From the NCBI RefSeq assembly GCF_037042905.1, contig NC_087250.1, positions 18,104,001-18,168,000 of the forward strand: 64,000 bases of DNA, read 5' to 3'. Of this stretch, positions 710 to 59,718 are shown piece by piece. Every line of letters begins with the position of its first letter. Within the stretch, counting starts at the first letter, position 1. Under the pieces are notes generated by a model, which was not told where the DNA came from, did no database searches, and was given only the letters and a program-made list of their open reading frames with translations. This stretch comes from Lytechinus pictus (lineage: Eukaryota). A program made the position numbers and the translations under genes.

Positions 710-837
710 NNNNNNNNNNNNNNNNNNNNNNNNNNNNNNNNNNNNNNNNNNNNNNNNNNNNNNNNNNNNNNNNNNNNNNNNNNNNNNNNNNNNNNNNNNN
801 NNNNNNNNNNNNNNNNNNNNNNNNNNNNNNNNNNNNN
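710..837. other. Assembly gap (128 N)
   Basis: Run of N. Confidence 1.
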
Positions 838-9493: not shown

Positions 9494-10698
9494 GGCTGGG
9501 TTCACATAGAAGTATACGGTATACGGTATTCGCTATTTGCCATTCGCTATACGCTATACGGGCATGGCGGGTCACATAAAGGTAGCACGCGTGTCTTACT
9601 TTAATATTCAAAATGGATACTTCAGACGAAGAAGATTTGGCTCTTCTCCTACTGGCCGAGGCTGAGGAGGTACATAATTATAAAGTTAATTTCTGAAAAA
9701 AAAGAAAAGAAATCATATTTTTTCTACATAACTTACTAAGATTCGAAAATAAGCTTGTTTTGGACTAACTTCAAGCAGAGAAGTCACCTCTGCAAATTAT
9801 TAAACTTCTATGTAATACAACTTTTAATGATTTTTTTTTAATGGGGTTAATTCAGCCAGTCCGTCGAGATGGGCTTATTTGCGCCATATGATTTTACACA
9901 CTAAAAACTAAAATTTTATTTTGGGGGAGGGGGGGGGGTTGAGGAATGTTATTGGAAATACTGCAGCTATGTTTCCAAATTTATATATCAAGATTTCAAA
10001 CCTGTATCAGCCTAATTGATTTTATCAATCATTCCTATTTTTGCTTTGATGACGTCATTTTTAGGGGGGGGGGGGCTTGATTCTACTCCCCCATCCCAGC
10101 TTTGTGAAATCATAGCAAAAGTGAAATAATAAATAAATCATTTTATAAACGATATTTTCTTGAATGAAATCTATTTCCACATTATTATCGACTTATTATA
10201 AGAATAATTAAGTAATTAATTAAACATGACTCAGCGATACACAACAACATAGGTCAAGTAGCCTTCGCTGCGGACCTTTTTGACCTTGTATCTTCAGTCA
10301 TTTCAAGGTCAAAAAAGACAGAACGAAAAATGCAGAGCCCACATAAATCATATAATAAACTCTGAAGTGCTGAATAACTTAAATATGACGGCATGTGCTA
10401 GAAATTTCAACAAAAAGAGTACCAAGAAATCATTTCATTTGAACTTACCTCATTTAACCAACGCACACATTAAATATTATAGGGAAATTCAGAACACCAC
10501 CTGCCACGTCTGTATACGCTGCACGAAAGAGTACGATTCCTACTATACTATACTATACGCAGCTATACGGCATTTTTGTATAGTGCCCTCTCATGTGACC
10601 CGGTATTAGGAAATCCTATTGTTCGATTCAAGCTATTCGCGTGCCCTCGAAAACGTGCACTGTATACCCGAATAGTATACTTCTATGTGAACCCAGCC
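9494..10698 (+). mobile_element. PIF/Harbinger-type non-autonomous element
   Basis: Perfect 24-bp TIR GGCTGGGTTCACATAGAAGTATAC; 3-bp TTA TSD on both sides. Confidence 0.85.
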
Positions 10699-10855
10699 TT
10701 ATGGCAACATTGCCATCCAATGGTAACGCTGATCAACAGCCAATCAAAATCAAGCAGCAACTGAACCCTTGTCTACATAGAGGCTCGTTTGAGGAAACAT
10801 TTTGCTAATTGTAATTGTACCGCCCTCTACGTCGCGAAATGGTGTGAAAACCGTA

Positions 10856-20687: not shown

Positions 20688-20985
20688 CTAAGTGTCGTGA
20701 AATATGAATTCAGCTTCATTTCTTAACCCAACGGTCTCTAAAGCAAGTTGAAGTTTTTTAACCTGTCCACTAGGTCGGACGCGCTTTCTCCAGTCTTGAA
20801 GCATCTCTTTAAGACCTGCATTCGAGGCAATACTTGCAGAAGAGTCTGCTCTGGAAAGATACTTGCTGACCATCGAGTGGGAGAAACCTAGCTGGTAACC
20901 AAGCTCACTTGCATCCTTTATTCCAGAGACTAAACCAGTCAACACCTGTATCACGTCGTTCGAAACGAACCTCAATCGGCCTCTT
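20688..20985 (-). CDS. Last coding exon: C-terminal death domain (DD5)
   Basis: ..ASELGYQLGFS..LKEMLQDWRKR..KLQLALETVGLRNEAE..*; phase-2 acceptor. Confidence 0.85.
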
Positions 20986-23900
20986 CTGAATGTGGATTAA
21001 ACAAAGTGCAGTCTGAGTTCAGTCAAGTTAGAGTAGACACTTCAAATCACTAATTTCATTGGAAAATATTTTAAATTCAAGGTCAATGTCCACATGATCA
21101 TCAAAGATCTTTATCTGATACGTTCAGTTCAATATTTCAAACCAACGCAAAAAGTGATCACGCTGAGAATTGTCAACATATGATAGAAAAGCGCATGTGG
21201 GACTGTGTTTTATTGTTTGGCGAAATGCATAATTAACCAGCAGCAACAATAAAATTCTTAATTTGCTAATTGGTAAGCAATGACGCATCTACAACCATAA
21301 TCATTTTGCACATGATTATGTTTCGTTTATTGGTGGTTATTTCCTTGCATTTGTGCAAATTCTTTCTCGTCATCACAACTGGGGTTTATTTTTGATCCAC
21401 ACAATCTGCATCATTATGTAAAAATTTGGAGCTACTATACTGTATAATTGAAATACGGACAAAATTCACCTTCCAATTCTATTTAAAAAATAAAAGTAAT
21501 CATTAAATGAATGGTACAAAATACTAATCCATGATTTCATGGAATCTGTTCGTATTCCTTTTCATCAACTTGGCATTTTGTACCGAAATAATTTTGCATA
21601 TATTTTCCATCTAATAAGGAAAAAAAACACGTAGGTGATCATAAAATTGCATTTGTGAAATGTCATGTTTTTAAAATTTGAATAACAATTTTTTTCAGAG
21701 TTCTTTATAAAAAATCATTCTAAAAATGATTCATTTGTCGGTTATCTTAAATTTTTGGCCAAATTGTCGCATTTCAACTATTTTTCTGTAACTACGTAAA
21801 GTTCTAAACTCATACGTGTTGAAAGATTTACATTCTCTTACCTTTGTGTTTTTTCGTAATCAGGTTCCACTGTTAAAGAAAAAAGAAAGCCAACAAAGTT
21901 CTGGATTTAAGTACTCCACAAGCTTATAAATGCACCATAAAATATTCATTTCTCTTAATGGAATGATCTATTCCAAAGATGATTTCGTTATGGATTTTTT
22001 TGTCAAGTCAAGAACATGATGCCTGATACATCATTAGCATTCTTTTTGACGTGATATCATGCGAATAGAATGGAAATCAATATGATTGTTTGAGTACTCT
22101 TACATTCAAAGTGCAATTAGCAAAATTTCTNNNNNNNNNNNNNNNNNNNNNNNNNNNNNNNNNNNNNNNNNNNNNNNNNNNNNNNNNNNNNNNNNNNNNN
22201 NNNNNNNNNNNNNNNNNNNNNNNNNNNNNNNNNNNNNNNNNNNNNNNNNNNNNNNNNNNNNNNNNNNNNNNNNNNNNNNNNNNNNNNNNNNNNNNNNNNN
22301 NNNNNNNNNNNNNNNNNNNNNNNGGAAATCTGACTTTGATCGATAATTTCTCCTAGGTTTTAGTGAATATTACTGTGTGATTGATACCAAATCATTTAAT
22401 TCACTTTAAAATGATACCCTACATAATATGATTATGGTTCACATAGAGGTGCAGTGCCTCGAAATGTGGGGCAATGTCAAAATTCAAAGTTGCAAAATGA
22501 CACAATATTGAAAGTCACTGTTCTTTTTTTTTGTGATTAAGGTATCAAAGAAAAGAGCAGATATTGAACTTTTTAGTCATGTGATTTTCTTTTTGAAATT
22601 CAGATACCCCCCGCCAAATGAGTTTTTGGTATCCTTTCTTCAAATTGTTTTTGCTCACTCATGCTTGAATGAGGAATTATCTAAGTAATATCAGATGAAA
22701 ATTTGGGTTTTTTAGCTTTACATTGGTAGGTCATTTGTCTATTTTATTTATGATTAAGTTATGATAAATCATCGCTAAATCTCGGTTTCGTTTTTTCTGG
22801 GACGCACTGTATATAGATATAGATATAAAATGACTGTGTTCGATGGTGTTTTTATTTTAAAAATCATCCGTCTTCATTCACATATGATCTTTCTTTTTTC
22901 ACATACCTTCTTTAGAGATATTAATTTCTTGTTCTGCAAGTGTGACCTGGCCTTGCTCAATGGAAACACGAACAATCTTATCATCGGTTGAGGGCGGTAG
23001 AATGATGTTGATAGTATTACAACCTCCAGATAGTAGGGAACACACATGAACCTTTATGAATAAAGAGATTGACAATGGAATCTGATAATTGACATGAACT
23101 GCTTTTAATAAAATACATTGTTTACAATCATCATTTTATCTTTGTCGAACATTTTTGGCTCGTGATTTTTTTTTCTGCATCATTCTGTAGAGACCACATT
23201 ATTTACTTTCCTTAAAAAATTGGATCAAGTTTTTAGAAGATGATAGTGATTATTACAAGCGATTCTAGGGAGGATAGTAAGAACATTTTCTTAGTAATAA
23301 TAGATGGGATTTATAAAGCGCCAAATCCACTCTGCGGCAGAGTGCTCAAGGCGCCTATTAAAGTTAGGTGGTAAGCGCTTAGTAAATTTGCTTCACAGTA
23401 ATATAGATATAGATATGCTACATGAAATCAAAGAGGGGTGACAGAAAAGTTCTTCGGATGCTTACAGTTTCTTGGGTCTTCTCAGAGCCAGTTAGGCATG
23501 AAATCTTGATGTCATCTTCAGCAGATTCCAAATTAAATTTGATTACAGTCGTGACTTCATAGAATGGTTCTGATAAGCTATAATTCTGTCCTCTTACACC
23601 CTGGAAAGAAACGTTAAAAATCTAGATATCATGTGTGATTCACTGTTTGGATAAAATGTATGCATGTATCAAGGAAGATGCGTTTATTGTATAATCAATA
23701 AATAAACACAGACACACTTTTTTTTTTTCAATACACACGCATCCCTCTCTCACACACGCACACCCTCATCCACCCACATACACACCCACATATATATTAC
23801 TGATACACGATCAAATTTTCATGTACTTGAGAGCATCTCTTACAGATGCGACAAGTTTTGCTTCTTTAATGTGTTTAAAGGGTCAGATTTTGCTATTGTA

Positions 23901-26900
23901 TAATTATTGTTCATGCATTGAATGCAACTCTTGATAATCAACTTAGGGTCTGTATGTACATACTGTAGTGTTGCAAGGATGTGCTATGTAGATTCGAAGA
24001 TTGGGATGCTGGAAGTTGCTCATGGACAGAGGCTGTGATACTTCACAGGTGAACGGAACTCCATGAATATCGTTTGAAGACAGAGCAAAGTATTGAAGAT
24101 GACGTGTCGAGAAGGTAACTATGTCTTCTGAGATCTCAAAACCCTTCGACGATTCAGGAAGCAAAGTCCTATAACCAAATTCTCCTAGAATATTTAACGA
24201 TAGACGAGAAAATACTTGGCGTTCAAGCCAGTGTATTGTGTTGGAAACAACGTTAACTAATACATTTACGTTATTTACCTCATACATTATTTTAAGTTGC
24301 TATACATTTCACCATCTGTTCTGGCGTATCTGGTGTACAAAAAAAAAGAGAAAATGCGGCTAAATATAAATTTGCAAAATTACATATCAACGCCACGAAG
24401 CCAACAAAGCACACAAGAGAACCAAATTCATATTACATATACTATATCCTATATTACCTGGTTCTATTTTGCTATAAAGCTTCACACGCAAGTCTTGCTT
24501 CTTCTGCTGGTATCGATCTGGAGCAATGTAGTGTGGAAGCACTATAGTTGCAGGTTTGAGAAGATGATGGTTGAAGGAACATCGGATGGGTGGTGTTATA
24601 AGAACCTCCTCAGGATCCAGAGGAAACTTAGATGGACTTCGACTGAGTATAGTGAGAGTAACAAGTGATCTCATTCCTTTGGGGATCGCTCCTGAAGGAA
24701 TGGATACCCTAATATCAGGTTCGTCCATCCTCAGCTCTCCACCCTCATGATCAATGAGGCCATGTGTGAACGGATCTAAGAAACCCGGGTGATGTGGCAT
24801 TGCTGTATTTGGGAAGTAAAAGAAAATCCGATCAGGAAATAATAATGATAATAACAGACATTTGTATAGCGCCATCTATCTAGAAACAATGTATTCCGAG
24901 GCGCAATGATATTATTACTTTTACCCCAGCTTTAGCTCGAGCTGCCTTTCAGCGCTCGTGCATTCAAGGAATTAATCCTGCTGGGTACCCATTCACCTCA
25001 CCTGGGTTGATTGCAGCACAGTGTGGATAAATTTCTTGCTGAGGGAAAACGCGCCATTACTATGATTCGAACCCACGACCCTCTGTTTGAAAGGCGAGAG
25101 TCAGAACCACCAGACCACGTCGCGCCCATTTTAGAAATATATAGTGTGGGTGTTTAAAAAAAATATTTGAGTGTGTTTTTTATTCAATGATAACAAAAGG
25201 AAAAACCTTTCATTGTGTCTTTTTATTCAATTATTAAATCTGAAAAACGAGAGAGAGAGAGAGAGATCTGGCTAGGATAAGACGAAGCATGTCTCCTTTA
25301 TTTTATTGCACAAATAGAAGCATTATATACTTATGGCACAATTATTTACTTTCAAATGTAATTAATAATATGAATAAAGGCACATGTTCGTTTGGCCTTC
25401 GATGTTTATTGTTAGATTTATTGTACAAGGATGGCTACTACATAATACCAGGGACTCAGTTTTGAGGGGAGTGAGAGTGGTCACTTGCTACTGCTCTCCT
25501 TAAACCATTGTGGTAGAGCGATTTATCACTCGCCTCAGCAATTGTTTAAAGAGTGTCAGTCAATGATCAAACTGTTAGAGGCAACCTTGAAAACCTCATT
25601 CTCTTTCAAGGTTTTGTAAATAACACACAATTATATTGTAAGCAATAACATACTTGCAAGAATGACATTAAAAATTTCAATGAGATAAATATTGCATAGA
25701 TCTATTTCTGATTGTTTGTCTCCTTTGGTTGTGTTTTGTAACTTAATGAACGTTCCTCCATCCATTTTTAAATCGGACAAGAGAGTTCCCTTTGTATGTC
25801 AAAGACTTTTTTGTAGTGCTCCCTTAAGATTAAGAGAGTTGTTCATTGCTCCCTCATAATTATAAAACCGAGTCAATGTAATACGCAGAATAAATCAGCA
25901 AAAATATGATAGGTCTATGCGACAAAAGGCACACACATTTCAAAAAAGAAAATACACTTGATTTAATTATGTCCCATGAATATACAAGCCTACCTCTGGC
26001 TATATGTTCTGCAGCATCATTGAAATTAAAAGCTTGAACGATTTCAAGCAACCTCAGCCTTGTTCCTCCTTGTTTGACCCATCTCTGAAGCATGTGTAGA
26101 ATCACCTGACGTATCAAGGCAGGTTCAAAGGTCAAAGATGAAGCCATCACCTGAGGAATTTCAGAAGCTGGTAGATCTAGCCGTTGGGAGAGGTCAATAA
26201 GGTCTGGAGATGTACGAATCTTGACAGAGATTTCATCAATACCTTTATATTGGAGGACATAATCACATAAATTTACAGTGAATCAGGTCGGTGACACAAC
26301 ATTTTCCCGGCGACAATTGCTCCGGGCTTTATTTCGTTTAAGATAACTGATATGGGGTTAGGGTTGCAAGGGTAGGCACTTTTGATGACAAAGTACAGCG
26401 AGGGGCGATGAAATGTCCAGCTCCTACGTCACTATCCATCCGACGGTTCGCCGATGAATATTCATTAGATCGTGGTCGTGTGCATGTGTGTTTGTACAAT
26501 ACCGAGTGTAAAGAACCAAAGAGAGTTTTCAAATGGTGTGTGTGAATAAAACAACGTAGGAGTTTATAGTGTAGAAAATAAATGTGTTTGATGAAGTTTT
26601 TACGAAAGAGGAAATAATATAAATATGGAGGACAATGGAAGATGAGGTGAGGCAAGTACAGTACTATGTTTTTTTTTTTTTTTTTCAAAAGTATTAATAT
26701 ATAATACAAATATATATGAAGGACAATGTAAGATGAGATGAGGCAAGTGTACAGTGAGGCTTTAACAAAGAATGTGTAGAGGACAATGTGAGATGAGCTA
26801 AGGCAAGTGTGCAGTGAGATTTTTTTTCAAAAGAGGAGATAATACAAATATATTATGGAGGACAATGTAAGATGAGGTGAGGCAAGTGTACAGTGAGGTT

Positions 26901-29900: not shown

Positions 29901-30200
29901 TAGCTTGTCAATTGCATAAAAAGATCTTTTTTTTTACAAGTGACCCCAATTTTTCTCAAGTTTTACTTCACTTTATAAACTGACCAAGCCATGGTCCTTT
30001 GAGAAAATAAGACTGTCAAAATAATAAGAAATCAGAGAAAAAATTTCAGGAAGGTCCAACACATATTTCATGGTATTGCCGAAATGCCCAAATATATATT
30101 TTTATCTGCCAAAAAAAGCATGTTACAATTAACATGTTTTTTTTTTTACTGGCAAGTATTATACTAGCAGGACATGATAATAAAAAGAAACTGAAGAATA

Positions 30201-30252
<52 letters not shown>

Positions 30253-36200: not shown

Positions 36201-36459
36201 CCTGTGTAATTGTTATGGTAATCACTGCAAAGTTTAGATCGTCTTCACTGGGTGGAACGTATATCGATATACATTGGCTTATCTTGGCTAGAAGGTCCCT
36301 AAGAGAAACGATCTGTTGGGGGTGAAAATACAGCAGCAGAATAGAAATGCATAAACCGCCAAGAGGCTGTTCCGTTTGGGCAGGCCTTGATCCACCATCA
36401 AAAAAGGTACTATTTAAACGCAGGGGGGGGGGGGCTACTTAGATTTGGTTAGGATCAAT

Positions 36460-36491
<32 letters not shown>

Positions 36492-42088: not shown

Positions 42089-42119
<31 letters not shown>

Positions 42120-51100: not shown

Positions 51101-54100
51101 CTCCTTAATGACCTCAGCTCCCTTACTGATCATATATTTGATGACGTCAATGTGCCCATTCGAAGCAGCACTGTGTAATGCAGTCAAACCATTTCTATCT
51201 TCCTTATTGACCTCAGCTCCTTCACTGATCAGATATTTGATGACGTCAATATGCCCATTGGAAGCAGCACTGGGTAATGCAGTCCCACCACTTTTATCCT
51301 CCTTTTTGACCTCAGCTCCTTCACTGATCAAATATTTGATGACATCAATATGCCCATTGGAAGCAGCACTGTGTAATGCATTCCGACCATCATTATACTC
51401 CTTATCGACCTCAGCTCCTTCACTGATCAGATATTTGATGACGTCAATGTGCCCATCGGAAGCAGCACTGTGTAATGCAGTCCAACCACTTCTATCCTCC
51501 TTATTGACCTCAGCTCCTTCACTGATCAGATATTTGATGACGTCAATATGACCATTGGAAGCAGCACTGTGTAATGCAGTCCCACCACTTTTATGCTCCG
51601 TATTGACCTCAGCTCCTTCACTGATCAGATATTTGATGACGTCAGTATGACCATTGGAAGCAGCACAGTGTATTGTAGTCAGACCATCATTATTCTCCTT
51701 AACGACCTCAGCTCCCTTATTGATCAGATATTTGATGACATCAATATGCCCATTGGAAGAAGCACTGTGTAATGCAGTCCGACCATTATTATACTCCTTA
51801 TCGACCTCAGCTCCTTCACTGGTCAGATATTTCATGACGTCAATATGACCATTGGAAGCAGCACAGTGTAATGGAGTCCGACCATCATTATCCCCCTTAT
51901 TGACCTCAGCCCCTTCACTGATCATATGTTTGATGACATCAATATGCCCATCGAAAGCAGCACTGTGTAATGCAGTCCAACCACTTTTATCCTCCTTATT
52001 GACCTCAGCTCCTTCACTGATCAGATATTTGATGACGTCAATACGACCAATGGAAACAGCACTGTGTAATGCAGTCTGACCATTATTATCCCCCTTATTG
52101 ACCTCAGCTCCATGGCTGATCAGATATTTGATGACGTCAATGCGACCATTCTTAGCAGCACTGTATAATGCAGTCCGATCATTATTATCCTTCTTATTGA
52201 CCTCATCTCCATTACTGATCAGATATTTGATTACTTCAATATGGCCTAACCTAGAAGCAATGTGTAAAGCTGTCTGACCATCTCTTTCCCCCTTATTGAC
52301 CTCAGCTCCTTCACTGATCAGATATTTGATGACGTCAAGATGCCCATTGGAAGCAGCAATGTGTAATGCAGTCTGACCATCTTTATCCCCTTTATTAACC
52401 TGAGCTCCTTCACTGATCAGATATTTGATGACGTCAAGATGCCCATTGGAAGCAGCAATGTGTAATGCAGTCTGACCATCTTTATTCCCTTTATTGACCT
52501 TAACTCCTACACTAATCAGATAGTTGATGACGTCAGTATGACAATTGGAAGCAGCACTGTGTAATGCAGTCAAACCATTTCTAGCTTCCTTATTGACCTC
52601 AGCTCCTTCACTGATCAGATATTTGATGACGTCAATATGACCATCGGAAGCAGCACTGTGTAATGCAGTCCCACCAGTTTTATCCTCCTTATTGACCTCA
52701 GCTCCTTCACTGATCAGATATCTGATGACGTCAGTATGACCCTTAGAAGCAGCACTGTGTATTGCAGTCCGACCATAATCATCCTCCTTATTGACCTCAG
52801 CTCCTTCACTGATCAGATATTTGATGACGTCAGTATGACCATTGGAAGCAGCACAGTGTATTGCAGTCAGACCATCATTATCCTCCTTATTGACCTCAGC
52901 TCCCTTACTGATCAAATATGTGATGACGTTAAAATGCCCATTGGAAGCAGCAATGTGTAATGCAGTCACGCCAATTTTATTCTCCTTATTGACCTCAGCT
53001 CCTTGACTGATCAGATATTTGATGACGTCAGTATGACCATTGGAAGCAGCACAGTGTATTGCAGTCAGACCATTATTATCCTCCTTAACGACCTCAGCTC
53101 CCTTATCGATCAGATATTTGATGACATCAATATGCCCATTGGAAGCAGCACTGTGTAATGCACTCCGACCATCATTATACTCCTTATCGACCTCAGCTCC
53201 TTGACTGATCAGATATTTGATGACGTCATTATGACCATTAGAAGCAGCACAGTGTATTGCAGTCAGACCATTATTATCCTCCTTAACGACCTCAGCTCCC
53301 TTATCGATTAGATATTTGATGACATCAATATGCCCACTGGAAGCAGCACAGTGTAATGGATTCTGACCATTATTATCCCCCTTATTGACCTCAGCCCCTT
53401 CACTGATCATATGTTTGATGACATCAATATGCCCATCGAAAGCAGCACTGTGTAATGCAGTCCAACCACTTTTATCCTCCTTAATGACCTCAGCTCCCTT
53501 ACTGATCAGATATTTGATAACTTCAATATGCCCTAACCTAGAAGCAATGTGTAATGCAGTCTGGCCATCTTTATCCCCCTTAATGACCTCAGCTCTTTCA
53601 TTGATCAGATATTCGATGACGTTAATATGACCATTTAAAGCAGCACAGTGTAATGGAGTCCGACCATCATTATCCCCCTTATTGACCTCAGCCCATTCAC
53701 TGATCATATGTTTGATGACATCAATATGCCCATCGAAAGCAGCACTGTGTAATGCAGTCCAACCACTTTTATCCTCCTTATTGACCTCAGCTCCTTCACT
53801 GATCAGATATTTCATGACGTCAAGATTACCATTGGAAGAAGCACAGTGTAATGGATTTTGACCATTATTATCCCCCTTATTGACCTCAGCCCCTTCACTG
53901 ATCAGATATTTGATGACATCAATATGCCCATCGAAAGCAGCACTGTGTAATGCAGTCCAACCACTTTTATCCTCCTTATTGAGCTCAGATCCTTCACTGA
54001 TCAGATATTTGATGACGTCAATACGACCAATGGAAACAGCACTGTGTAATGCAGTCTGACCATTATTATCTCCCTTATTGACCTCAGCTCCATGGCTGAT

Positions 54101-57100
54101 CAGATATTTGATGACGTCAATACGACCATTCTTAGCAGCACTGTGTAATGCAGTCCGATCATTATTATCCTTCTTATTGACCTCAGCTCCATTACTGATC
54201 AGATATTTGATGACTTCAATATGGCCTAACCTAGAAGCAATGTGTAATGCTGTCTGACCATCTCTTTCCCCCTTATTGACCTCAGCTCCATTACTGATCA
54301 GATATTTGATGACTTCAATATGGCCTAACCTAGAAGCAATGTGCAATGCTGTCTGACCATCTCTTTCCCCCTTATTGACCTCAGTTCCTATACTGGTCAG
54401 ATATTTGATGACGTCAAGATGCATATTGGAAGCAGCACTGTGTAATGCAGTCCAACCATTTCTATCTTCTTTATTGACCTCAGCTCCTTCACTGAACAGA
54501 TATTTGATGACATCAATATCGGAAGCAGCACTGTGTAATGCAGTCCCACCACTTTTATCCTCCTTTTTTACCTCAGCTCCTTCACTTATCAGATATTTAA
54601 TGACGTCAGTATGACCATTAGAAGCAGCACAGTGTATTGCAGTCAGACCATCATTATCCTCCTTAACGACCTCAGCTCCCTTACTAATCAGATATTTCAT
54701 GACCTCAAGATTAGCATTGGAAGCAGCACTGTGCAATGCAGTCCGACCATTATTATCCTCCTTATCGACCTCAGCTCCCTTACTGATCAGATATTTGATA
54801 ACTTCAATATGCCCTAACCTAGAAGCAATGTGTAATGCAGTCTGGCCATCTTTATCCCCCTTAATGACCTCAGCTCTTTCATTGATCAGATATTCGATGA
54901 CATTAATATGACAATTGAAAGCAGCAAAGTGTAATGGAGTCTGACCATTATTATCCCCCTTATTGACATCAGCCCCTTCACTGATCAGATGTTTGATGAC
55001 ATCAATATGCCCATCGAAAGCAGCACTGTGTAATGCAGTCCAACCACTTTTATCCTCCTTATTGAGCTCAGCTCCTTCACTGATCAGATATTTGATGACG
55101 TCAATACTACCAATGGAAACAGCACTGTGTAATGCAGTCTGACCATTATTATCCCCCTTATTGACCTCAGCTCCATGGCTGATCAGAGATTTGATGACGT
55201 CAATACGACCATTCTTAGCAGCACTGTGTAATGCAGTCCGACCATTATTATCCTTCTTATTGACCTCAGCTCCATTACTGATCAGATATTTAATGACTTC
55301 AATATGGCCTAACCTAGAAGCAATGTGTAATTCTGTCTGACCATCTCTTTCCCCCTTATTGACCTCAGCTCCTTTACTGATCAGATATTTGATGACGTCA
55401 AGATGCCCATTGGAAGCAGCAATGTGTAATGCAGTCTGACCATCTTTATCCCCTTTATTAACCTTAGCTCCTTCACTGATCAGATATTTGATGACGTCAA
55501 GATGCCCATTGGAAGCAGCAATGTGTAATGCAGTCTGACGATCTTTATCCCCTTTATTGGCCTTAGCTCCTTCACTGATCAGATATTTGATGACGTCAGT
55601 ATGACCACTGGAAGCAGCACTGTGTATTGCAGTCATACCATCATTATCCTCCTTAACGACCTCAGCTCCCTTACTGTTCATATATGTGATGACGTCAAGA
55701 TGCCCATTGGAAGCAGCACTGTGTAATGCAGTCCAACCGCTTCTATCCTCCTTAATGACCTCAGCTCCCTTACTGATCAGATATTTGATGACGTCAATGT
55801 GCCCATTCGAAGCAGCACTGTGTAATGCAGTCAAACCATTTCTATCTTCCTTATTGACCTCAGCTCCTCCACTGATCAGATATTTGATGACGTCAATATG
55901 CCCATCGGAAGCAGCACTGTGTAATGCAGTCCCACCACTTTTATCTTCCTTATTGACCTCAGCTCCTTCACTGATCAGATATCTGATGACGTCAGTATGA
56001 CCATTAGAAGCAGCACTTTGAATTGCAGTCCGACCATCTTTATCCTCCTTATTGACCTCAGCTCCTTCACTGATCAGATATTTGATGGCGTCAGTATGAC
56101 CATTGGAAGCAGCACAGTGTATTGCAGTCAGACCATCATTATCCTCCTTAACGACCTCAGCTCCCTTATCGATCAGATATTTGATGACATCAATATGCCC
56201 ATTGGAAGCAGCACTGTGTAATGCACTCCGACCATCATTATACTCCTTATCGACCTCAGCTCCTTCACTGATCAGATATTTCATAACCTCAAGATTACCG
56301 TTGGAAGCAGCACTGTGTAATGCAGTCCGACCATTATTATCCTCCTTATCGACCTCAGCTCCCTTACTGATCAGATATTTGATGACGTCAAGATGCCAAT
56401 TGCAAGCAGCACTGTGTAATGCAGTCCGACCATTATTAGCCTCCTTAAAGACCTCAGCTCCCTTACTGATGAGATATTTGATAACTTCAATATGCCCTAA
56501 CCTAGAAGCAATGTGTAATGCAGTCTGGCCATCTTTATCCCCCTTAATGACCTCAGCTCTTTCATTGATCAGATATTCGATGACGTTAATATGACCATTG
56601 AAAGCAGCACAGTGTAATGGAGTCTGACCATTATTATCCCCCTTATTGACCTCAGCCCCTTCACTGATCATATGTTTGATGACATCAATATGCCCATCGA
56701 AAGCAACACTGTGTAATACAGTCCAACCCCTTTTATCCTCCTTATTGAGCTCAGCTCCTTCACTGATCAGATATTTGATGACGTCAATACGACCATTGGA
56801 AGCAGCACTGTGTAATGTAGTCTGACTATTATTATCCCCCTTATTGACCTCAGCTCCATGGCTGATCAGACATTTGATGACGTCAATAGGACCATTCTTA
56901 GCAGCACTGTGTAATGCAGTCCGACCATTATTATCCTTCTTATTGACCTCACCTCCATTACTGATCAGATATTTGATGACTTCAATATGGCCTAACCTAG
57001 AAGCATTGTGTACTGCAGTCCGACCATTATTATCCTTCTTATTGACCTCAGCTCCTTTACTAATCAGATATTTAATGACGTCAAGATGCCCATTGGAAGT

Positions 57101-57868
57101 AGCAATGTGTAATGCAGTCTGACCATCTTTATCCCCTTTATTGACCTCAGCTCCTACACTGATCAGATATTTGATGACGTCAGTATGACCATTGGAAGCA
57201 GCACTGTGTATTGCAGTCCGACCATCATTATCCCCTTTATTGACCTCAGCTCCTTCACTGATCAGATATTTGATGACGCCAAGATGCCCATTGGAAGCAG
57301 CCGTGTGTAACGCAGTCTGACCATCTTTATCACCTTTATTTCCCTCAGTTCCTTCACTGATCAGATATTTGATGACGTCAATGTGACCATTGGAAGCAGC
57401 ACTGTGTAATGCAGTCCAACCATTATTGTCCTCCTTAACGACCTCAGCACTCTTATTGATCAGATATTTGATGACGTCAAGATGCCCATTGGAAGCAGCA
57501 CTGTGTAATGCAGTCCGACCATTATTATCCTCCCTAAGGATCTCAGCTCCCTTACTGATCAGATATTTGATGACGTCAATGTGGCCAAACCTAGCAGCAC
57601 TGTGTAATGCAATCCGACCAATATTATCCTCCTTATTGACCTCTGCTCCTTGACTGATCAGATATTTTATGACGTCAATATGACCATTGGAAGCAGCAAT
57701 TTCTAATGAAGTCCGACCAACTTTATCTTTCTTATTGACCTCTGCTCCCTTCCCGATCAGAGTTTCAATGACGTCAATTTGAGAATGGAAAGCAGCCCTG
57801 TGTAATGCAGTCCAACCACTATTATCCGCCTTATTGACATCAGCTCCTTGGCTTATCAAATAATTCAT
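20688..57868 (-). CDS. Giant ankyrin-repeat / ZU5-UPA / multi-death-domain protein: 21 exons, ~6,070 aa from ATG 57868; start uncertain, possibly a 5'-damaged allele
   Basis: Hand-spliced GT-AG exons with matching phases: 57868-43364, 43044-42862, 42544-42387, 40222-40188, 39310-38978, 38422-38175, 37470-37342, 36312-36150, 35804-35759, 35409-35123, 34451-34436, 34152-33893, 32983-32855, 32626-32333, 26242-25994, 24802-24458, 24184-23964, 23600-23466, 23051-22907, 21869-21842, 20985-20688; no internal stop seen. Confidence 0.8.
21842..21869 (-). CDS. 28-nt linker exon (VEPDYEKTQ)
   Basis: TTTAACAG acceptor, GTAAG donor; bridges phase 1 to phase 2. Confidence 0.7.
22131..22323. other. Assembly gap (193 N) inside an intron
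   Basis: Run of N. Confidence 1.
22525..22809 (-). mobile_element. Tc1/mariner-like terminal arm (same family as 7200)
   Basis: Ends TTTTTTCTGGGACGCACTG|TA. Confidence 0.7.
22907..23051 (-). CDS. Exon, UPA-like domain 2, C-terminal part
   Basis: VHVCSLLSGGCNTINIILPPSTDDKIVRVSIEQGQ..; phase 0 to 1. Confidence 0.75.
23291..23357 (-). mobile_element. Isolated L2-type 3' tail remnant
   Basis: Minus strand GCGCCTTGAGCACTCTGCCGCAGAGTGGATTTGGCGCTTTATAAAT..TATTATTA resembles the LINE tail at 15040-15107. Confidence 0.6.
23466..23600 (-). CDS. Exon, UPA-like domain 2, middle part
   Basis: GVRGQNYSLSEPFYEVTTVIKFNLESAEDDIKISC..; phase 0 to 0. Confidence 0.75.
23964..24184 (-). CDS. Exon, end of ZU5-2 and start of UPA-2
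   Basis: ..FEISEDIVTFSTRHLQYFAL..; phase 1 to 0. Confidence 0.78.
24458..24802 (-). CDS. Exon, ZU5 domain 2
   Basis: GLIDHEGGELR..VSIPSGAIP..LITPPIRC..LLKPATIVLPH. Confidence 0.88.
24840..25127 (-). mobile_element. Full-length tRNA-derived SINE with an L2-like 3' tail
   Basis: Minus-strand head GGGCGCGACGTGGTCTGGTGG..GGTCGTGGGTTCGAATC; tail GCGCCTCGGA..GGCGCTATACAAAT..(ATT)n. Confidence 0.82.
25994..26242 (-). CDS. Exon, death-like domain 4
   Basis: DLIDLSQRLDLPASEI..ILHMLQRWVKQGGTRLRLLEIVQAFNFNDAAEHI; phase 1 to 1. Confidence 0.8.
26610..27720 (+). repeat. ~75-bp minisatellite (about 14-15 units) in the left arm; inverted copies at 30945-31210
   Basis: GGAGGACAATGTAAGATGAGATGAGGCAAGTGTGCAGTGAGGTTTTTTCAAAAGAGGAGATAATACAAATATATAT. 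Confidence 0.92.
30199..30249. repeat. (TA)n microsatellite
   Basis: Direct reading. Confidence 0.95.
31573..32208. mobile_element. MITE with ~200-bp imperfect TIRs, TA-flanked
   Basis: TTCACAAGCGCACT..CAATTGGTTCCGGAA..GTCACAAAA vs TTTTGTGAC..TTCCGGAACCAATTG..AGTGCGCTTGTGAA. Confidence 0.75.
32333..32626 (-). CDS. Exon, divergent death-like domain 3
   Basis: ..LALQVANALRLDVNDII..LAWKLLHQWCRRL..; phase 1 to 1. Confidence 0.75.
32855..32983 (-). CDS. Exon, acidic/Pro-rich linker
   Basis: DDENSDDVTPLYPDVNPDPSPQEPEEDEDEENEDWKIIEYSES; phase 1 to 1. Confidence 0.75.
33009..33331. mobile_element. Harbinger-like MITE
   Basis: Imperfect TIR GGTCAGTATTCTGAAGTCGGGTT / AACCTGACTTCGGAAAACGGGCC; AGA on both flanks. 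Confidence 0.6.
33893..34152 (-). CDS. Exon, death domain 2 (absent from the ORF track)
   Basis: EISDCTLLQFSRHIIKEKFYEIGRQLGFDEIELHHIEHRSLYNRKDANIQMLSLWK..; phase 2 to 1. Confidence 0.85.
34436..34451 (-). CDS. Predicted 16-nt microexon (DIDPTE)
   Basis: AAG|ATATTGACCCGACTGA|GTAAGT; supplies the required phase 1 to 2 shift. Confidence 0.6.
35123..35409 (-). CDS. Exon, death domain 1
   Basis: ..QFYDLGIALGFTIAELDRIEYRRFGDRQQATYDMLLAWRGR..; phase 2 to 1. Confidence 0.88.
35759..35804 (-). CDS. 46-nt linker exon
   Basis: DGPVCQFPSKQTDVT; TTAG acceptor, GTAAGT donor; phase 1 to 2. Confidence 0.7.
36150..36312 (-). CDS. Exon, UPA-like domain 1, C-terminal part
   Basis: IVSLRDLLAKISQCISIYVPPSEDDLNFAVITITITQAG..; phase 0 to 1. 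Confidence 0.75.
37342..37470 (-). CDS. Exon, UPA-like domain 1, middle part
   Basis: ATQEESRQQSYHRCHRSVPFNVEKKAGDVTITCHREEEEIESQ; phase 0 to 0. Confidence 0.75.
38175..38422 (-). CDS. Exon, end of ZU5-1 and start of UPA-1
   Basis: ..PYCRMYKRHLELYIGHCAEWWVLIP..CTPYVP..; phase 1 to 0. Confidence 0.78.
38630..38781 (-). mobile_element. tRNA-derived SINE (second family)
   Basis: Minus strand GGTGCCGCGGCCGAGTGGTCTAAGGCAC..GGGGTTCGATTCCCGGC (A and B boxes); imperfect cloverleaf. Confidence 0.7.
38978..39310 (-). CDS. Exon, ZU5 domain 1
   Basis: VNLEDHGISMYLPPGAV..LICYGIRCDPHTLIFNQPVKINIPH; phase 1 to 1. Confidence 0.85.
40188..40222 (-). CDS. 35-nt linker exon (LPSLDGVQSTR)
   Basis: CTGCAG acceptor, GTAAG donor; phase 2 to 1. 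Confidence 0.72.
40605..40947. mobile_element. hAT-like MITE nested in a Kolobok-like element (~40450-42330)
   Basis: TIR TAGCGTACCTA / TAGGTACGCTA; 8-bp TSD AATATGCA / AATATACA. Confidence 0.7.
41194..42168. mobile_element. Helentron/HINE-like non-autonomous element carrying ~160-190-bp tandem repeats
   Basis: Subterminal IR GTCTCACCTGCAT / ATGCAGGTGAGAC, terminal hairpin, (GCC)n; GACCTTTGACC recurs at about 41409, 41570, 41734 and 41925. Confidence 0.75.
42387..42544 (-). CDS. Exon, terminal divergent ankyrin/cap repeat
   Basis: VSKEYYSGRLSPENALVFYLLEHGARIDIKDEADCLPIHYAKDEMIRQMILA; phase 0 to 2. Confidence 0.82.
42862..43044 (-). CDS. Exon, divergent C-terminal ankyrin repeats
   Basis: NDSVAIHLAVMHGLTSIIERMIAKGFDLNVQSNDGQTCLHKAI..; phase 0 to 0. 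Confidence 0.85.
43364..57868 (-). CDS. Giant single exon encoding about 146 tandem ankyrin repeats (4,835 aa)
   Basis: 33-aa unit GxTALHxAAxxGHxDVIKYLISxGAEVNKxDxx; AAG|GTAGG donor at 43364/43363. Confidence 0.93.
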
Positions 57869-59705
57869 GACGTCAAACCGACCAAACTTAGCAGAACGGT
57901 TTAATGCAGTCCAACTATCATTATCCTCCTTATTGACCTCAGCTCCTTCACTGATCAGATATTTAATGACGGCAATATGACCATTGGAAGCAGCACTGTG
58001 TATTGCAGTCCGACCATCATTATCCTCCTAATTGACCTCAGCCCCTTCAACTGATCAGATATTTGATGACGTCAATATGACTCATCTCAGCAGCACGGTG
58101 TAGTGCAGTCCAACCATCATTATCCTCCTTATTGACCTCAGCTCCTTCACTAATCAGATATTTGATGACGTCAATATGACCATTGGAAGCAGCACTTTGT
58201 ATTGCAGTCCGACCATCATTATCCTTCTTATTGACCTCAGCTCCCTCACTGATCAGATATTTAATGACGGCAATATGACCATTGGGAGCAGCACGGTGTA
58301 TTGCAGTCCGACCATTATTATCCTCCTTATTGACCTCAGCCCCTTCACTATTCAGATATTTGATGACGTCAATATGACCATTGGAAGCAGCACTGTGTAT
58401 TGCAGTCCGACCATCATTATCTTCCTTATGGACCTCAGCTCCTTCACTAATCAGATATTTGATGACGTCAATATGACCATTGGAAGCAGCACTGTGTATT
58501 GCAGTCCGACCATCATTATCTTCCTTATTGACCTCAGCTCCCTTACTGATCAGATATTTATTAACGGCAATATGAACATTGGAAGCAGCACGGTGTATTG
58601 CAGTCCGACCATCATTATCCTCCTTATTGACCTCAGCCCCTTCACTGATCAGATATTTGATGACCTCAATATGACTCATCTCAGCAGCACGGTGTAGTGC
58701 AGTCCAACCATGATTATCCTCCTTATTGACCTCAGCTCCTTCACTGATCAGATATTTGATGACGTCAATATGACCATTGGAAGTAGCACTGTGTAATGCA
58801 GTCCGACCATTATTATCCTCCTTAGCGACCTCAGCTCCCATACTGATCAGATATTTGATGACGTCAATATGACCTTTGGAAGCAGCACTGTGTAATGCAG
58901 TCAAACCACCATTATCCTCCTTATTGACCTCAGCTCCCTCACTGATTAGATATTTGATGACATCAATATGACCATTGGAAGCAGCACTGTGTAATGCAGT
59001 CAAACCACCATTATCCTTCATATTGAACTCAGCTCCCTTACTGATCAGATATTTAATGACATCAATATGACCAATTGAAGCAGTACTGTGTATTGCAGTC
59101 CGACAATCATTATCCTCCTTATTGACCTCAGCTCCTTCACTGATCAGATATTTGATAACGTCAATATGACCATTGGAAGCAGCACTGTGTAATGCAGTCC
59201 GACCATCATTATCCTCCTTATTAACCTCAGCTCCTTCACTGATCAGATATTTGATGACGTCAATATGACTATTGAAGGCAGCACTGTGAAATGCAGTCCG
59301 ACCATTATTATCCTCCATATTGACCTAATCTCCTTGACTGATAGATATTTGATGACTTCAATATGATAATTTTGAGCAGCACGGTCTAATGAAGTCAAGC
59401 CATTATTATCCTCTTTTTTTAACCTTAGCTCCTTGACTTATCAGATATTTGATGACGTCAATATGACAATCGAAAGCAGCAATATGTAGTGCAGTCTGAC
59501 CATTATCATCCTCCTAATATTGACCTCAGCTCCTTGATTGAAATTTGATGACTTCAATATGACCATTTTGAGTAGCACGGTGTAATGCAATCCGACCAAC
59601 ATGACCAATTTTATCCTCCTTATTGACCTCTGCTCCTTGAATTGTAATATTTTTAATGAAGACAATGACCTTTCTGAGCAGAATCGTGTAATGAAGTCCG
59701 ACCAT
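43395..59705 (-). repeat. 99-bp coding tandem array (~165 units) with higher-order duplications
   Basis: Near-identical blocks recur at offsets of 1584, 1683 and 2079 bp (16, 17 and 21 x 99). Confidence 0.95.
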
Positions 59706-59718
59706 ACATCTGTTAGTT
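58028..59718 (-). pseudogene. Disrupted 5' portion of the ankyrin array; includes the 423-aa ORF 59318-58047
   Basis: In-frame TAG at 58030-58028; 1-bp insertion at 58049/58050; further indels at about 59342 and 59500-59670; candidate acceptor TTTTTTCCTCAG before 59718. Confidence 0.75.

What the first reader, a model, noticed from the sequence alone, without database searches (positions are those of the whole stretch)
20688..59718. Giant ANK~146+ / ZU5-UPA / five-death-domain protein: candidate diversified intracellular sensor-signalling system
Seen: the scattered minus-strand ORFs splice with continuous phase into one ~6,070-aa protein, ANK array-ZU5-UPA-DD-DD-acidic-DD-DD-ZU5-UPA-DD. I see no signal peptide, TM segment, NACHT or kinase domain. 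Known: canonical ankyrins have 24 diverged repeats plus ZU5-ZU5-UPA-DD; PIDD1 is LRR-ZU5-ZU5-UPA-DD; the UNC5 tail is ZU5-UPA-DD. None of these has about 150 homogeneous repeats, two separated ZU5-UPA modules or five death folds. Inference: a rapidly evolving cytosolic recognition array coupled to a death-fold scaffold, like an NLR or PIDDosome receptor without an NTPase, possibly one of an expanded echinoderm innate-immune family.
Basis: partly seen in the sequence, partly recalled or inferred. Interest (0 to 1): 0.9.

Follow-up and report, generated by a model that had tools for sequence, protein, structure and literature searches.

The report
Giant ankyrin-repeat death-domain gene, sea urchin
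A sea-urchin gene joins about 148 nearly uniform ankyrin repeats, all in one 14.7-kb exon, to a duplicated UNC5/ankyrin-type death-signalling tail; it belongs to an unstudied sea-urchin-only gene family whose repeat number varies widely, but this copy's start is broken.

Summary
On the minus strand, 20 exons with GT-AG borders join in continuous phase into 6,062 codons, counted from an internal ATG at 57868.

- **Array:** exon 1 is 148 in-frame 33-residue ANK units. It has no stop, where about 39 are expected by chance.
- **Tail:** 1,227 aa reading ZU5-UPA-DD-DD-acidic-DD3-DD-ZU5-UPA-DD. It aligns end to end (89% identity) with a Lytechinus variegatus protein annotated as uncharacterized.
- **RNA:** contigs join exons E2-E3-microexon-E4-E5.
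- **Assembly gap:** it lies in an intron, and no coding sequence is missing.
- **Fold:** module 1 best matches the UNC5b ZU5-UPA-DD structure. Four death domains are supported. DD3 is only a probable divergent death-like domain.
- **Family:** found only in sea urchins, in tandem clusters (26 DD3 loci, 72 ZU5 exons in this genome).
- **Repeat number:** about 9 in the L. variegatus homologue, 30-55 in three sampled paralogues, 148 here. Other ANK frames in this genome reach 9,098 codons.
- **Variation:** it is concentrated at known ANK binding positions.

Caveats: the ancestral start (about 59705) is followed by six frameshifts and two stops, so this copy may be a null allele or use an internal start. 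Immune function is untested.

The scan had already noted parts of this gene separately.

The parts
43364..58027 (-). Giant exon 1: open frame holding 148 ANK units of 33 aa (one of 31 aa); first in-frame ATG at 57868; donor AAG|GTAGGC after 43364
   Evidence: 0 stops against 39 +/- 6 expected
58028..59709 (-). Decayed 5' edge of the array: 17 units carrying 6 frameshifting indels, one in-frame 9-nt insertion and 2 in-frame TAGs (59327, 58030). The ATG at 59705-59703 is orthologous to the L. variegatus start. A 425-codon open stretch runs 59324-58050
47462..52411 (-). Recent higher-order duplications of 16-17 units; 48254-49936 is 100% identical to 49937-51619
42862..43044 (-). E2, a divergent ANK repeat (Pfam Ank 1.4e-5)
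42387..42544 (-). E3, last weak ANK-like repeat; joined to E2 in RNA contigs of two runs
40188..40222 (-). E3b, a 35-nt micro-exon (ctgcag|...|gtaaga); present in RNA contig X3 record 18
38978..39310 (-). E4, ZU5a
   Evidence: Pfam ZU5 1.1e-10; joints
36150..38422 (-). E5 (38422-38175), E5b (37470-37342) and E6 (36312-36150): UPAa
   Evidence: fold match to the UNC5b ZU5-UPA-DD structure
35759..35804 (-). E6b, a 46-nt linker exon
35123..35409 (-). E7, DD1
   Evidence: Pfam Death 3.9e-5; six helices in the model
33893..34150 (-). E8, DD2
   Evidence: Pfam Death 2.5e-5; hhalign DD1-DD2 98.7%
32855..32983 (-). E9, acidic linker (19 D/E in 43 aa)
32333..32626 (-). E10, DD3: a conserved helical domain, probably a divergent death-like fold
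   Evidence: no Pfam hit; hhalign 82.6% against the pooled DDs; only 15 representatives in 1.84 billion proteins
25994..26242 (-). E11, DD4
   Evidence: Pfam Death 0.011; six helices at pLDDT about 90; the top VIA-align matches to the two-domain DD3-DD4 model are death domains, Z up to 10.8
24458..24802 (-). E12, ZU5b (an acceptor at 24775 is an alternative)
   Evidence: Pfam ZU5 8.9e-14
22907..24184 (-). E13 (24184-23964), E14 (23600-23466) and E15 (23051-22907): UPAb
22131..22323 (.). Assembly gap (N run) inside the intron between E15 and E16; not coding
21842..21869 (-). E16, a 28-nt linker exon; conserved with its splice sites in paralogue A
20688..20985 (-). E17, DD5 and the stop codon
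   Evidence: Pfam Death 0.002; hhalign DD2-DD5 83%; aligns with DD1 in A2

Best explanation
**What it is (shown).** This is one gene of a sea-urchin-only, tandemly clustered family of cytosolic proteins.
- An N-terminal ankyrin-repeat array of very variable length sits in a single exon. Here it has 148 in-frame units.
- The tail has two divergent last ANK repeats. Then comes an internally duplicated UNC5/ankyrin-type ZU5-UPA-DD unit with two extra tandem DD pairs between the copies: ZU5-UPA-DD1-DD2-acidic-DD3-DD4-ZU5-UPA-DD5.

**How it most likely works (inferred).**
- The concave face of the ANK array, where the between-repeat variation is concentrated, binds protein ligands, possibly multivalently.
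- Each ZU5-UPA pair holds its death domain in a closed, autoinhibited unit, as described for UNC5b (from my own knowledge of that work).
- Ligand binding or clustering opens the units. The five death domains on one chain then seed a helical death-domain oligomer. That oligomer recruits DD adaptors, leading to caspase or NF-kB-type signalling.
- The array grows and shrinks by unequal crossing-over within the exon.

**State of this copy.** It has lost its ancestral start. It is either read from an internal ATG (57868) or is a recent null allele.
For: - **Anatomy:** 20 in-phase GT-AG exons, collinear at 88.8% identity with XP_041467271.1. RNA contigs support the spliced joins.
- **Fold:** the AF2 model of ZU5a-UPAa-DD1 was built on the 79-92% identical L. 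variegatus homologue (pLDDT 76). Its best match is 3g5b, the UNC5b cytoplasmic domain: E 9.9e-16, TM 0.55/0.58 over 404 columns. Ankyrin-B 4d8o follows at 1.2e-12 and CARD8 at 1.2e-3.
- **Death domains:** the DD3-DD4 model (pLDDT 86) shows six helices for DD4. Its 12 best VIA-align matches are all death domains (FADD Z 10.8, rmsd 2.2 A over 80 aa).
- **Duplication:** the two modules align collinearly (hhalign ZU5a/b 91.6%, UPAa/b 71.9%). They share the intron phases 1,1,0,0,1,2.
- **Selection:** 0 stops in 148 units against 39 +/- 6 expected. Tail pN/pS is 0.35-0.45 against three paralogues, with splice sites kept.
- **Recognition-like variation:** the highest entropy is at ANK positions 2, 3, 5, 10, 13, 14, 26, 31 and 33. 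pN/pS is 1.74 there against 0.73 in the framework.
- **Family:** 26 DD3 loci and 72 ZU5 exons in clusters. Named homologues come only from Lytechinus and Strongylocentrotus.
- **Array length:** about 9 units in the L. variegatus locus, 30-55 in paralogues A-C, 148 here.
Against: - No functional, localisation or immune-challenge data exist.
- RNA depth on the tail exons in the one raw-read run was about 0.2-1.2.
- The 5' end carries six frameshifts and two stops. Translation from 57868 would need a long leader full of upstream ATGs.
- DD3 is not shown to be a death fold.
- The UPA domains and the closed conformation rest on a model of a homologue, not of this protein.
- The pN/pS figures are crude: they compare repeats within one gene, and gene conversion is present.
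- A perfect 1,683-bp duplication could be an assembly over-expansion.
Confidence: 0.5

Rival explanations
1. This copy is a young pseudogene or null allele. The start region decayed, and the array then inflated neutrally by unequal crossing-over. The long open frame is a leftover that has not yet had time to break.
For: - Six frameshifting indels and two in-frame TAGs lie within the first 17 units.
- The start that is orthologous to the L. variegatus ATG reads out of frame.
- There are perfect and 99.7% identical 1.6-kb internal duplications.
- The array is 3-15 times longer than in the sampled close relatives.
- RNA depth is very low.
Against: - The next 148 units have no stop, where about 39 are expected from their 1,517 differences to the consensus, and only one in-frame indel. 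Most of the divergence therefore arose under selection for an open frame.
- All 19 tail exons are intact with conserved splice sites, and pN/pS is about 0.35-0.45.
- Other very long open ANK frames exist in the same genome (3,421 and 9,098 codons), so length alone is no sign of decay.
Confidence: 0.28
2. It is a structural or mechanical adaptor like the canonical ankyrins. The long array acts as a spring or multivalent membrane-protein anchor, the ZU5 domains bind cytoskeletal partners, and there is no role in sensing or cell-death signalling.
For: - The ANK-ZU5-UPA-DD order is that of the ankyrins.
- The model matches ankyrin-B and ankyrin-G ZU5-UPA structures (E 1e-12 to 1e-6) and the ankyrin-G DD (Z 8.6).
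- There is no signal peptide, TM segment or enzyme domain.
Against: - There is one ZU5 per module, not the ZU5N-ZU5C pair of the ankyrins.
- The best fold match is UNC5b, not ankyrin.
- Single-sequence phmmer found no ankyrin match for the ZU5, UPA or DD parts.
- Five death domains, a clustered multigene family, changing repeat numbers and variation focused on binding positions are not features of the conserved housekeeping ankyrins.
Confidence: 0.15
3. The array length is an assembly artefact: a shorter array was over-expanded during assembly.
For: - 48254-49936 is identical to 49937-51619, and a third block is 99.7% identical.
- An N gap elsewhere in the gene shows the assembly is not perfect.
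Against: - Units are individually distinct: neighbour identity is 84%, falling to 64% at lag 39. At most about 17-33 of the 148 units could be duplicated in error.
- The register is kept across 14.7 kb.
- Several other long arrays occur in the assembly.
Confidence: 0.05

Closest known systems
UNC5 netrin receptors (cytoplasmic ZU5-UPA-DD unit, PDB 3g5b)
   Same: Each tail module has one ZU5, one UPA and one DD. The best structural match for the whole 402-residue model is 3g5b (E 9.9e-16, TM 0.55/0.58). UniRef automatically names the S. purpuratus homologues 'Netrin receptor UNC5'.
   Different: There is no ectodomain and no TM segment. An ANK array stands in place of the receptor part. The module is present twice, with four further DD-type domains between the copies. 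Sequence identity is about 12%.
Canonical ankyrins (ANK1/2/3: 24 ANK repeats, ZU5N-ZU5C-UPA, DD)
   Same: The order is ANK repeats, then ZU5-UPA, then DD. It matches the fold of the ankyrin-B ZU5-ZU5-UPA-DD tandem 4d8o (E 1.2e-12) and the ankyrin-G DD (Z 8.6).
   Different: It has 148 near-consensus repeats instead of 24 diverged ones, and a single ZU5 per module instead of a ZU5N-ZU5C pair. It has two modules, five DD-type domains, and no long unstructured regulatory tail. It belongs to a clustered multigene family rather than being a conserved single gene.
PIDD1 (LRR, ZU5-ZU5-UPA, DD; PIDDosome)
   Same: A repeat array is followed by ZU5-UPA-DD. The PIDD/RAIDD DD complex 2of5 is among the best DD matches (Z 9.4). 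The plausible logic is the same: a repeat sensor upstream of a DD oligomer.
   Different: It has ANK repeats instead of LRRs. There is no HFS/HFT/SFS tripeptide anywhere in the tail. The strand that ends each ZU5 reads IPHSLL and LPHYIA, so PIDD-type self-cleavage is not expected. My alignment of this motif to PIDD1 is from memory, not computed.
Unnamed sea-urchin predicted proteins (for example XP_041467271.1 from L. variegatus, UPI000222891A from S. purpuratus)
   Same: They are the same family. XP_041467271.1 has the same tail, collinear at 88.8% identity. The 2,135-aa S. purpuratus protein has about 30 ANK repeats plus two ZU5 domains and a Death domain.
   Different: All are annotated as uncharacterized. 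They are 0.7-2.1 kb-aa models with few ANK repeats. No protein of 2,700 aa or more with this ANK type turned up in the 5.8-billion-protein search. I found no paper describing the family.
Designed ankyrin repeat proteins (DARPins)
   Same: The repeats are close to the ANK consensus, and the variation is concentrated at positions 2, 3, 5, 13, 14 and 33. From my own knowledge, these are the positions randomised in DARPin libraries.
   Different: This is natural, about 50 times longer, and uses a restricted residue alphabet at each variable position. Positions 10, 26 and 31 vary as well.

Membership tests
Death domain superfamily (Pfam PF00531, six-helix bundle) | Sequence match to the Death profile over its curated cut-off | tested here: met
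   DD1 scores 24.1 bits and DD2 24.7 bits against a cut-off of 22.6. DD5 (18.7 bits) and DD4 (16.3 bits) fall under the cut-off. DD3 has no hit.
Death domain superfamily (Pfam PF00531, six-helix bundle) | Six-helix bundle fold | tested here: met
   This holds for DD1 and DD4, in models of the 90-92% identical homologue. Six helices run 303-393 and 98-179. The 12 best VIA-align matches to the DD3-DD4 model are solved death domains, Z 7.6-10.8. DD2 and DD5 were not modelled.
Death domain superfamily (Pfam PF00531, six-helix bundle) | DD3 (exon 32626-32333) is a death fold | tested here: inconclusive
   No Pfam hit, no PDB sequence hit, nothing useful in the Atlas. The model gives four helices, one 33 residues long. 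hhalign against the pooled DD1/2/4/5 profile gives 82.6% over 76 collinear columns. The VIA output does not say which of the two modelled domains was matched.
ZU5-UPA-DD unit (UNC5 / ankyrin / PIDD type) | ZU5 domain | tested here: met
   Pfam ZU5 1.1e-10 (42 bits) and 8.9e-14 (52 bits), cut-off 21.
ZU5-UPA-DD unit (UNC5 / ankyrin / PIDD type) | UPA domain between ZU5 and DD, the three packing as one unit | tested here: met
   Pfam gives no UPA hit on single exons. The 402-aa model matches the whole UNC5b ZU5-UPA-DD structure: 3g5b, probability 1.00, 404 columns. This was tested on the homologue P0137, not on the window's own spliced protein. Module 2 is inferred from its alignment to module 1.
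Canonical ankyrins | Adjacent ZU5N-ZU5C pair before UPA, and about 24 ANK repeats | tested here: not met
   There is one ZU5 per module and 148 repeats. phmmer of the ZU5, UPA and DD parts against five ankyrins found nothing at 1e-2.
UNC5 receptors | Ig/TSP ectodomain and a transmembrane segment | tested here: not met
   Exon 1 is filled by ANK units. The maximum 19-residue hydropathy is 1.32.
PIDD1 / FIIND self-cleaving proteins | HFS-type (or SFS) cleavage motif at the end of ZU5 | tested here: not met
   No HFS, HFT, SFS or HFC occurs in the tail. The motifs read IPHSLL and LPHYIA. The motif's position relative to PIDD1 is from memory.
NLR / STAND sensors | NACHT or NB-ARC NTPase domain | tested here: not met
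   Every exon is accounted for by ANK, ZU5, UPA, DD or short linkers. Pfam scans of the tail exons show no NTPase.
Expanded innate-immune receptor family of echinoderms | Multigene, clustered, lineage-restricted, diversifying | tested here: met
   26 DD3 loci and 72 ZU5 exons lie in clusters on C6, C8, C9 and C21. Named hits come only from sea urchins. Repeat numbers vary.
Expanded innate-immune receptor family of echinoderms | Expression in immune cells or response to challenge | not testable with these tools
   Only one read-laying run was allowed. It showed low depth in one RNA run of unknown tissue.

The most novel reading that the evidence does not exclude
Sea urchins have a family of intracellular receptors built on ankyrin repeats. 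In it, a hypervariable ANK array, resized from about 9 to more than 150 repeats by unequal crossing-over inside one exon, plays the part that LRRs play in NLRs. It signals without any NTPase through two autoinhibited ZU5-UPA-DD units and a chain of five death domains that pre-forms part of a death-domain oligomer.
Probability: 0.25. Interest if true: 0.85.

Novelty: new variant of a known kind. Interest (0 to 1): 0.62.

Why it matters
If the family is functional, it adds a new kind of receptor to animal innate immunity and cell-death signalling: an ANK-based, NTPase-free sensor with several death domains on one chain. It would also be a natural counterpart to designed ankyrin binders.

The gene is a clear case of a coding tandem array that is kept open over 14.7 kb while its length changes many-fold between close relatives. 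It also shows that current sea-urchin annotations cut these genes short: the closest annotated model keeps only about 5 ANK repeats.

The questions are directly testable with long-read cDNA, population long reads and death-domain interaction assays.

Tried and rejected
- **Search for a similar giant protein.** A search with the last 496 residues of the array against 5.8 billion proteins returned only generic ANK proteins at 51% identity or less, with no sea-urchin giant among the 120 listed hits.
- **Canonical ankyrins.** phmmer of the tail domains against five ankyrins gave ANK matches only.
- **UPA by Pfam.** Scans of single UPA exons found nothing. A weak GIDE hit on the 43-aa exon E5b is chance.
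- **DD3-DD4.** The profile against PDB sequences found nothing. Foldseek against the PDB found nothing, but VIA-align did. An Atlas feature search with DD3 gave only TPR-like leads under 0.9.
- **Micro-exon.** It was missed at 3 mismatches or fewer and found by local alignment.
- **Other paralogues.** The tails next to the 3,421- and 9,098-codon ANK frames are therefore unseen.
- **Literature.** Five searches found no description of the family. The 2006 sea-urchin apoptosis-genome paper, which I recall as listing many DD proteins, is not held.
- **Intron element.** An Rfam search on the abundant intron repeat found nothing.
- **'MVGL' start.** I rejected 'MVGL...' as a true N-terminus. At this locus it is the orthologous ATG read out of frame after a 1-nt deletion.
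- **TAG at 58030 as a splice acceptor.** I considered and rejected this because the upstream stretch is purine-rich.

Full report
**1. What is in the sequence**

On the minus strand, Tandem Repeats Finder reports one array at 43403-59602 with a 99-bp period, 163.7 copies, 84% matches and no indels. The frame from 58027 down to 43343 is open for 4,895 codons. It parses into 148 ankyrin units: 146 of 33 residues, one of 31 residues at 54652, and a divergent last unit. Nothing else fits in this exon, so it holds no NACHT, kinase or other domain. The highest 19-residue hydropathy in the whole model is 1.32, so there is no TM-like segment.

**2. The gene model**

Using splice sites, phase, conservation in a 60%-level paralogue and RNA contigs, I closed the chain into 20 exons. 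All have GT-AG borders and there is no stop.

| Exon | Coordinates (minus strand) | Content |
|---|---|---|
| E1 | (57868)-43364 | ANK array |
| E2 | 43044-42862 | divergent ANK |
| E3 | 42544-42387 | weak ANK-like |
| E3b | 40222-40188 | 35-nt micro-exon |
| E4 | 39310-38978 | ZU5a |
| E5 | 38422-38175 | UPAa |
| E5b | 37470-37342 | UPAa |
| E6 | 36312-36150 | UPAa |
| E6b | 35804-35759 | 46-nt linker |
| E7 | 35409-35123 | DD1 |
| E8 | 34150-33893 | DD2 |
| E9 | 32983-32855 | acidic linker |
| E10 | 32626-32333 | DD3 |
| E11 | 26242-25994 | DD4 |
| E12 | 24802-24458 | ZU5b |
| E13 | 24184-23964 | UPAb |
| E14 | 23600-23466 | UPAb |
| E15 | 23051-22907 | UPAb |
| E16 | 21869-21842 | 28-nt linker |
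| E17 | 20985-20688 | DD5 and stop |

From the first in-frame ATG (57868) this gives 6,062 aa with a tail of 1,227 aa.

Three independent checks support the model.
- **Annotated homologue.** The NCBI protein XP_041467271.1 of Lytechinus variegatus (P0137, 'uncharacterized protein LOC121417600') aligns with the tail from its first to its last residue at 88.8% identity. The only gaps are a 6-aa indel at the E7/E8 border and a 1-aa indel. It also carries the E1/E2 join (...VDNRDAK|SDSVAIHL).
- **RNA contigs.** In run X3, a 491-nt contig holds E2, E3, 33 further letters and E4. Those letters are the micro-exon, which I then found in the intron between ctgcag and gtaaga. Another X3 contig joins E4 to E5. 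A contig of run X1 joins E2 to E3. For E1/E2 the RNA support is indirect: one contig ends exactly at 43364, next to an unspliced contig that reads through. In the one raw-read RNA run, depth over the tail exons was only 0.2-1.2, on the strand expected for a minus-strand gene.
- **Paralogues.** In three paralogues of the same genome, nearly all projected exons keep AG/GT borders and open frames. pN/pS is 0.35-0.45.

**3. The assembly gap**

The N run 22131-22323 lies in the intron between E15 (donor after 22907) and E16 (acceptor before 21869).
- E15 leaves one base, the 28-nt E16 brings the count to two, and E17 supplies the last. The phase therefore closes without anything from the gap.
- E16 is conserved with both splice sites in paralogue A.
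- P0137 has no extra residues across this junction.
- In paralogue A, the positions matching 22120 and 22813 are 17 nt apart. The gap therefore sits in DNA that the paralogue lacks.

**4. Domains**

*Pfam on single exons*

| Domain | Result |
|---|---|
| ZU5a | 1.1e-10 |
| ZU5b | 8.9e-14 |
| DD1 | 3.9e-5, over the cut-off |
| DD2 | 2.5e-5, over the cut-off |
| DD5 | 0.002, under the cut-off |
| DD4 | 0.011, under the cut-off |
| DD3 | none |
| UPA exons | none |

- **ZU5a-UPAa-DD1** (402 aa, pLDDT 76) is beta-rich up to residue 290 and then has six helices. Foldseek's best match is 3g5b, the UNC5b cytoplasmic ZU5-UPA-DD structure (E 9.9e-16, probability 1.00, TM 0.55/0.58, 404 columns). Next come the ankyrin-B ZU5-ZU5-UPA-DD tandem 4d8o (1.2e-12), ankyrin-spectrin complexes, and CARD8 (1.2e-3).
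- **DD3-DD4** (180 aa, pLDDT 86) gives six helices for DD4. For DD3 it gives three short helices and one 33-residue helix. Foldseek found nothing. VIA-align's 12 best matches are all solved death domains: FADD Z 10.8 with rmsd 2.2 A over 80 residues, then Fas/FADD, RAIDD/PIDD, ankyrin-G, MyD88, RIPK1, p105, TNFR1, Pelle/Tube and UNC5H2. DED, CARD and PYD folds follow. The output does not tell which of the two domains was matched.

*Profile comparisons*

| Pair | hhalign probability |
|---|---|
| DD1-DD2 | 98.7% |
| DD2-DD5 | 83% |
| DD4-DD5 | 62% |
| DD3 vs pooled DD1/2/4/5 | 82.6% over 76 collinear columns |
| ZU5a-ZU5b | 91.6% |
| UPAa-UPAb | 71.9% |

The DD3 alignment lines up the LxL and Trp motifs.

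The two modules align collinearly and share the intron phases 1,1,0,0,1,2. The module was therefore duplicated as a block.

My reading is two ZU5-UPA-DD modules, four supported death domains, and DD3 as a probable divergent death-like domain that may lack the last helix. DD3 is nevertheless the best-conserved tail exon between distant paralogues (89% aa to the 25.0-Mb copy). It is rare: 15 representatives in 1.84 billion proteins.

No HFS, HFT or SFS tripeptide occurs in the tail, and the ZU5 ends read IPHSLL and LPHYIA. PIDD-type self-cleavage is therefore not expected. The motif's placement relative to PIDD1 is from my memory.

**5. The array as an evolving object**

- Units are not uniform. 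Mean nucleotide identity is 84% between neighbours and falls steadily to 64% at a distance of 39 units.
- Recent block duplications lie on top of this. 48254-49936 is 100% identical to 49937-51619, and 47462-49144 is 99.7% identical to the block 3,267 bp away.
- If the 1,517 differences from the consensus were placed at random, 39 +/- 6 stops would be expected (minimum 20 in 1,000 trials). None is seen.
- Amino-acid entropy is highest at ANK positions 3, 5, 10, 13, 14, 26, 31, 2 and 33. This set includes the beta-turn and first-helix positions that form the binding surface of ANK proteins and are randomised in DARPins (from my own knowledge).
- A crude between-repeat pN/pS is 1.74 at these codons against 0.73 elsewhere.

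**6. The 5' end is broken**

The region upstream of the array aligns with the start region of the L. variegatus gene. The orthologous ATG is at 59705-59703, but a 1-nt deletion puts it out of frame.

Against the array consensus, the first 17 units carry the following lesions:

| Position | Lesion |
|---|---|
| 59666 | -2 nt |
| 59608 | +9 nt (in frame) |
| 59542 | -5 nt |
| 59517 | +2 nt |
| 59422 | +1 nt |
| 59342 | -1 nt |
| 59327 | in-frame TAG |
| 58050 | +1 nt |
| 58030 | in-frame TAG |

Most are multi-base changes outside homopolymers, so they are unlikely to be simple read errors. The following 148 units have none.

Otherwise this haplotype is a recent null allele. I could not test this, because the single read-laying run was used on the tail.

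**7. Family and relatives**

The genome has 812 Mb in 368 contigs, and the window is C6:18104001-18168000.
- The ZU5a exon has 72 matches, the DD3 exon 26, and Pfam Death at least 75.
- The copies form same-strand clusters at C6 17.8-18.1 Mb (five genes, including this one), C6 24.5-25.0 Mb, C9 8.1-8.4 Mb, C8 10.7 Mb and C21.
- Identity to paralogue A varies by exon from 81% to 98.8%, a mosaic that suggests gene conversion.
- All named homologues come from Lytechinus variegatus, L. pictus and Strongylocentrotus purpuratus. They are called 'uncharacterized', 'ankyrin-3-like' or, by automatic naming, 'Netrin receptor UNC5'. A 2,135-aa S. purpuratus protein has about 30 ANK repeats plus two ZU5 and a Death hit.

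Repeat numbers differ widely:
- 7.8 TRF copies (a 341-codon frame) at the L. variegatus locus of P0137. P0137 is closer to this gene (86%) than to paralogues A-C (75-82%), and its locus lies at a similar chromosomal position.
- About 30, about 33 and about 55 in paralogues A, B and C.
- 148 here.
- Open ANK frames of 2,520, 3,421 and 9,098 codons elsewhere in this genome.

Exact orthology is uncertain because of the gene conversion. No protein of 2,700 aa or more with this ANK type appeared in the large protein search. Public annotation therefore seems to truncate these arrays.

**8. How it most likely works**

*Shown:* the anatomy, the fold relationships, purifying selection on the tail and on the array's frame, and the family's expansion and length variation.

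*Inferred:*
- The ANK concave face binds ligands.
- ZU5-UPA clamps the DD as in UNC5b.
- Opening exposes the death domains, which assemble with adaptor DDs as in the PIDDosome or Myddosome.
- Five DDs on one chain could pre-form part of such an oligomer.

*Rivals:* a young pseudogene with runaway array growth (0.28), an ankyrin-like structural adaptor (0.15), and assembly over-expansion (0.05).

**9. Novelty**

The building blocks and the ANK-ZU5-UPA-DD order are known. The following are not described in any paper I could find:
- the duplicated module;
- the chain of five DD-type domains;
- the single-exon array of about 150 near-consensus repeats;
- the family's restriction to sea urchins, with repeat numbers that change many-fold.

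The family does exist as unnamed predicted proteins. I rate it a new variant of a known kind. Earlier first-stage notes of this scan had already flagged parts of this same gene. These were the repeat code, the higher-order blocks, the duplicated module and the 5' decay. My checks agree with all four.

Noticed in passing
G000:C8:33856242-33882437 (+), outside the window: A single open frame of 9,098 codons made of ANK repeats 60-64% identical to this array. Further frames of 3,421 codons (C6:24944428-24952722) and 2,520 codons (C6:17936435-17943520) also exist. No ZU5 match was listed near the C8 giant, so its tail is unknown.
   Followed up: partly
window 41177-42262 (intron between E3 and E3b): A tandem element with 163-192-bp periods. 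It is extremely abundant in all four runs laid (summed contig depth up to about 490,000). In the stranded raw-read RNA run, about 1,800-2,100 first mates lie on + against 2-10 on -. It has no Rfam match. It is probably a dispersed, transcribed repeat family.
   Followed up: partly
window 26341-27856 (intron between E10 and E11): A long minisatellite-like tandem repeat with strong GC skew (+0.375 in 26001-28000). It gives repeated pseudo-ORFs (KKPHCTLAS...). It lies inside a 6-kb intron that is only a few hundred bases long in paralogues A-C.
   Followed up: no
window 48254-51619: A perfect 1,683-bp (17-unit) tandem duplication inside the coding array. It is either a very recent event or a possible assembly over-expansion.
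   Followed up: partly
window 20688-43044 compared with G000:C6:17813500-17863450 and C6:18054000-18103900: Exon-by-exon identity to the neighbouring paralogues is a mosaic. For example, E4 is 98.8% and E14 is 81% identical to paralogue A. E6 is 98.8% and E4 is 88.5% identical to paralogue B. This suggests gene conversion within the cluster.
   Followed up: partly
L016 (L. variegatus CM031020.1:17648542-17705348), 9775-10797: The NCBI model XP_041467271.1 starts at an out-of-frame ATG inside the array ('MVGL...'). The genomic frame instead starts MAWAPLHRAAYLGH..., so the annotated N-terminus looks wrong.
   Followed up: partly
window 42080-42120: A (CGC/CGT)n microsatellite in the intron, next to the abundant repeat. 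Reads appear cut there.
   Followed up: no
window 710-837: A second assembly gap (128 N), outside the finding.
   Followed up: no
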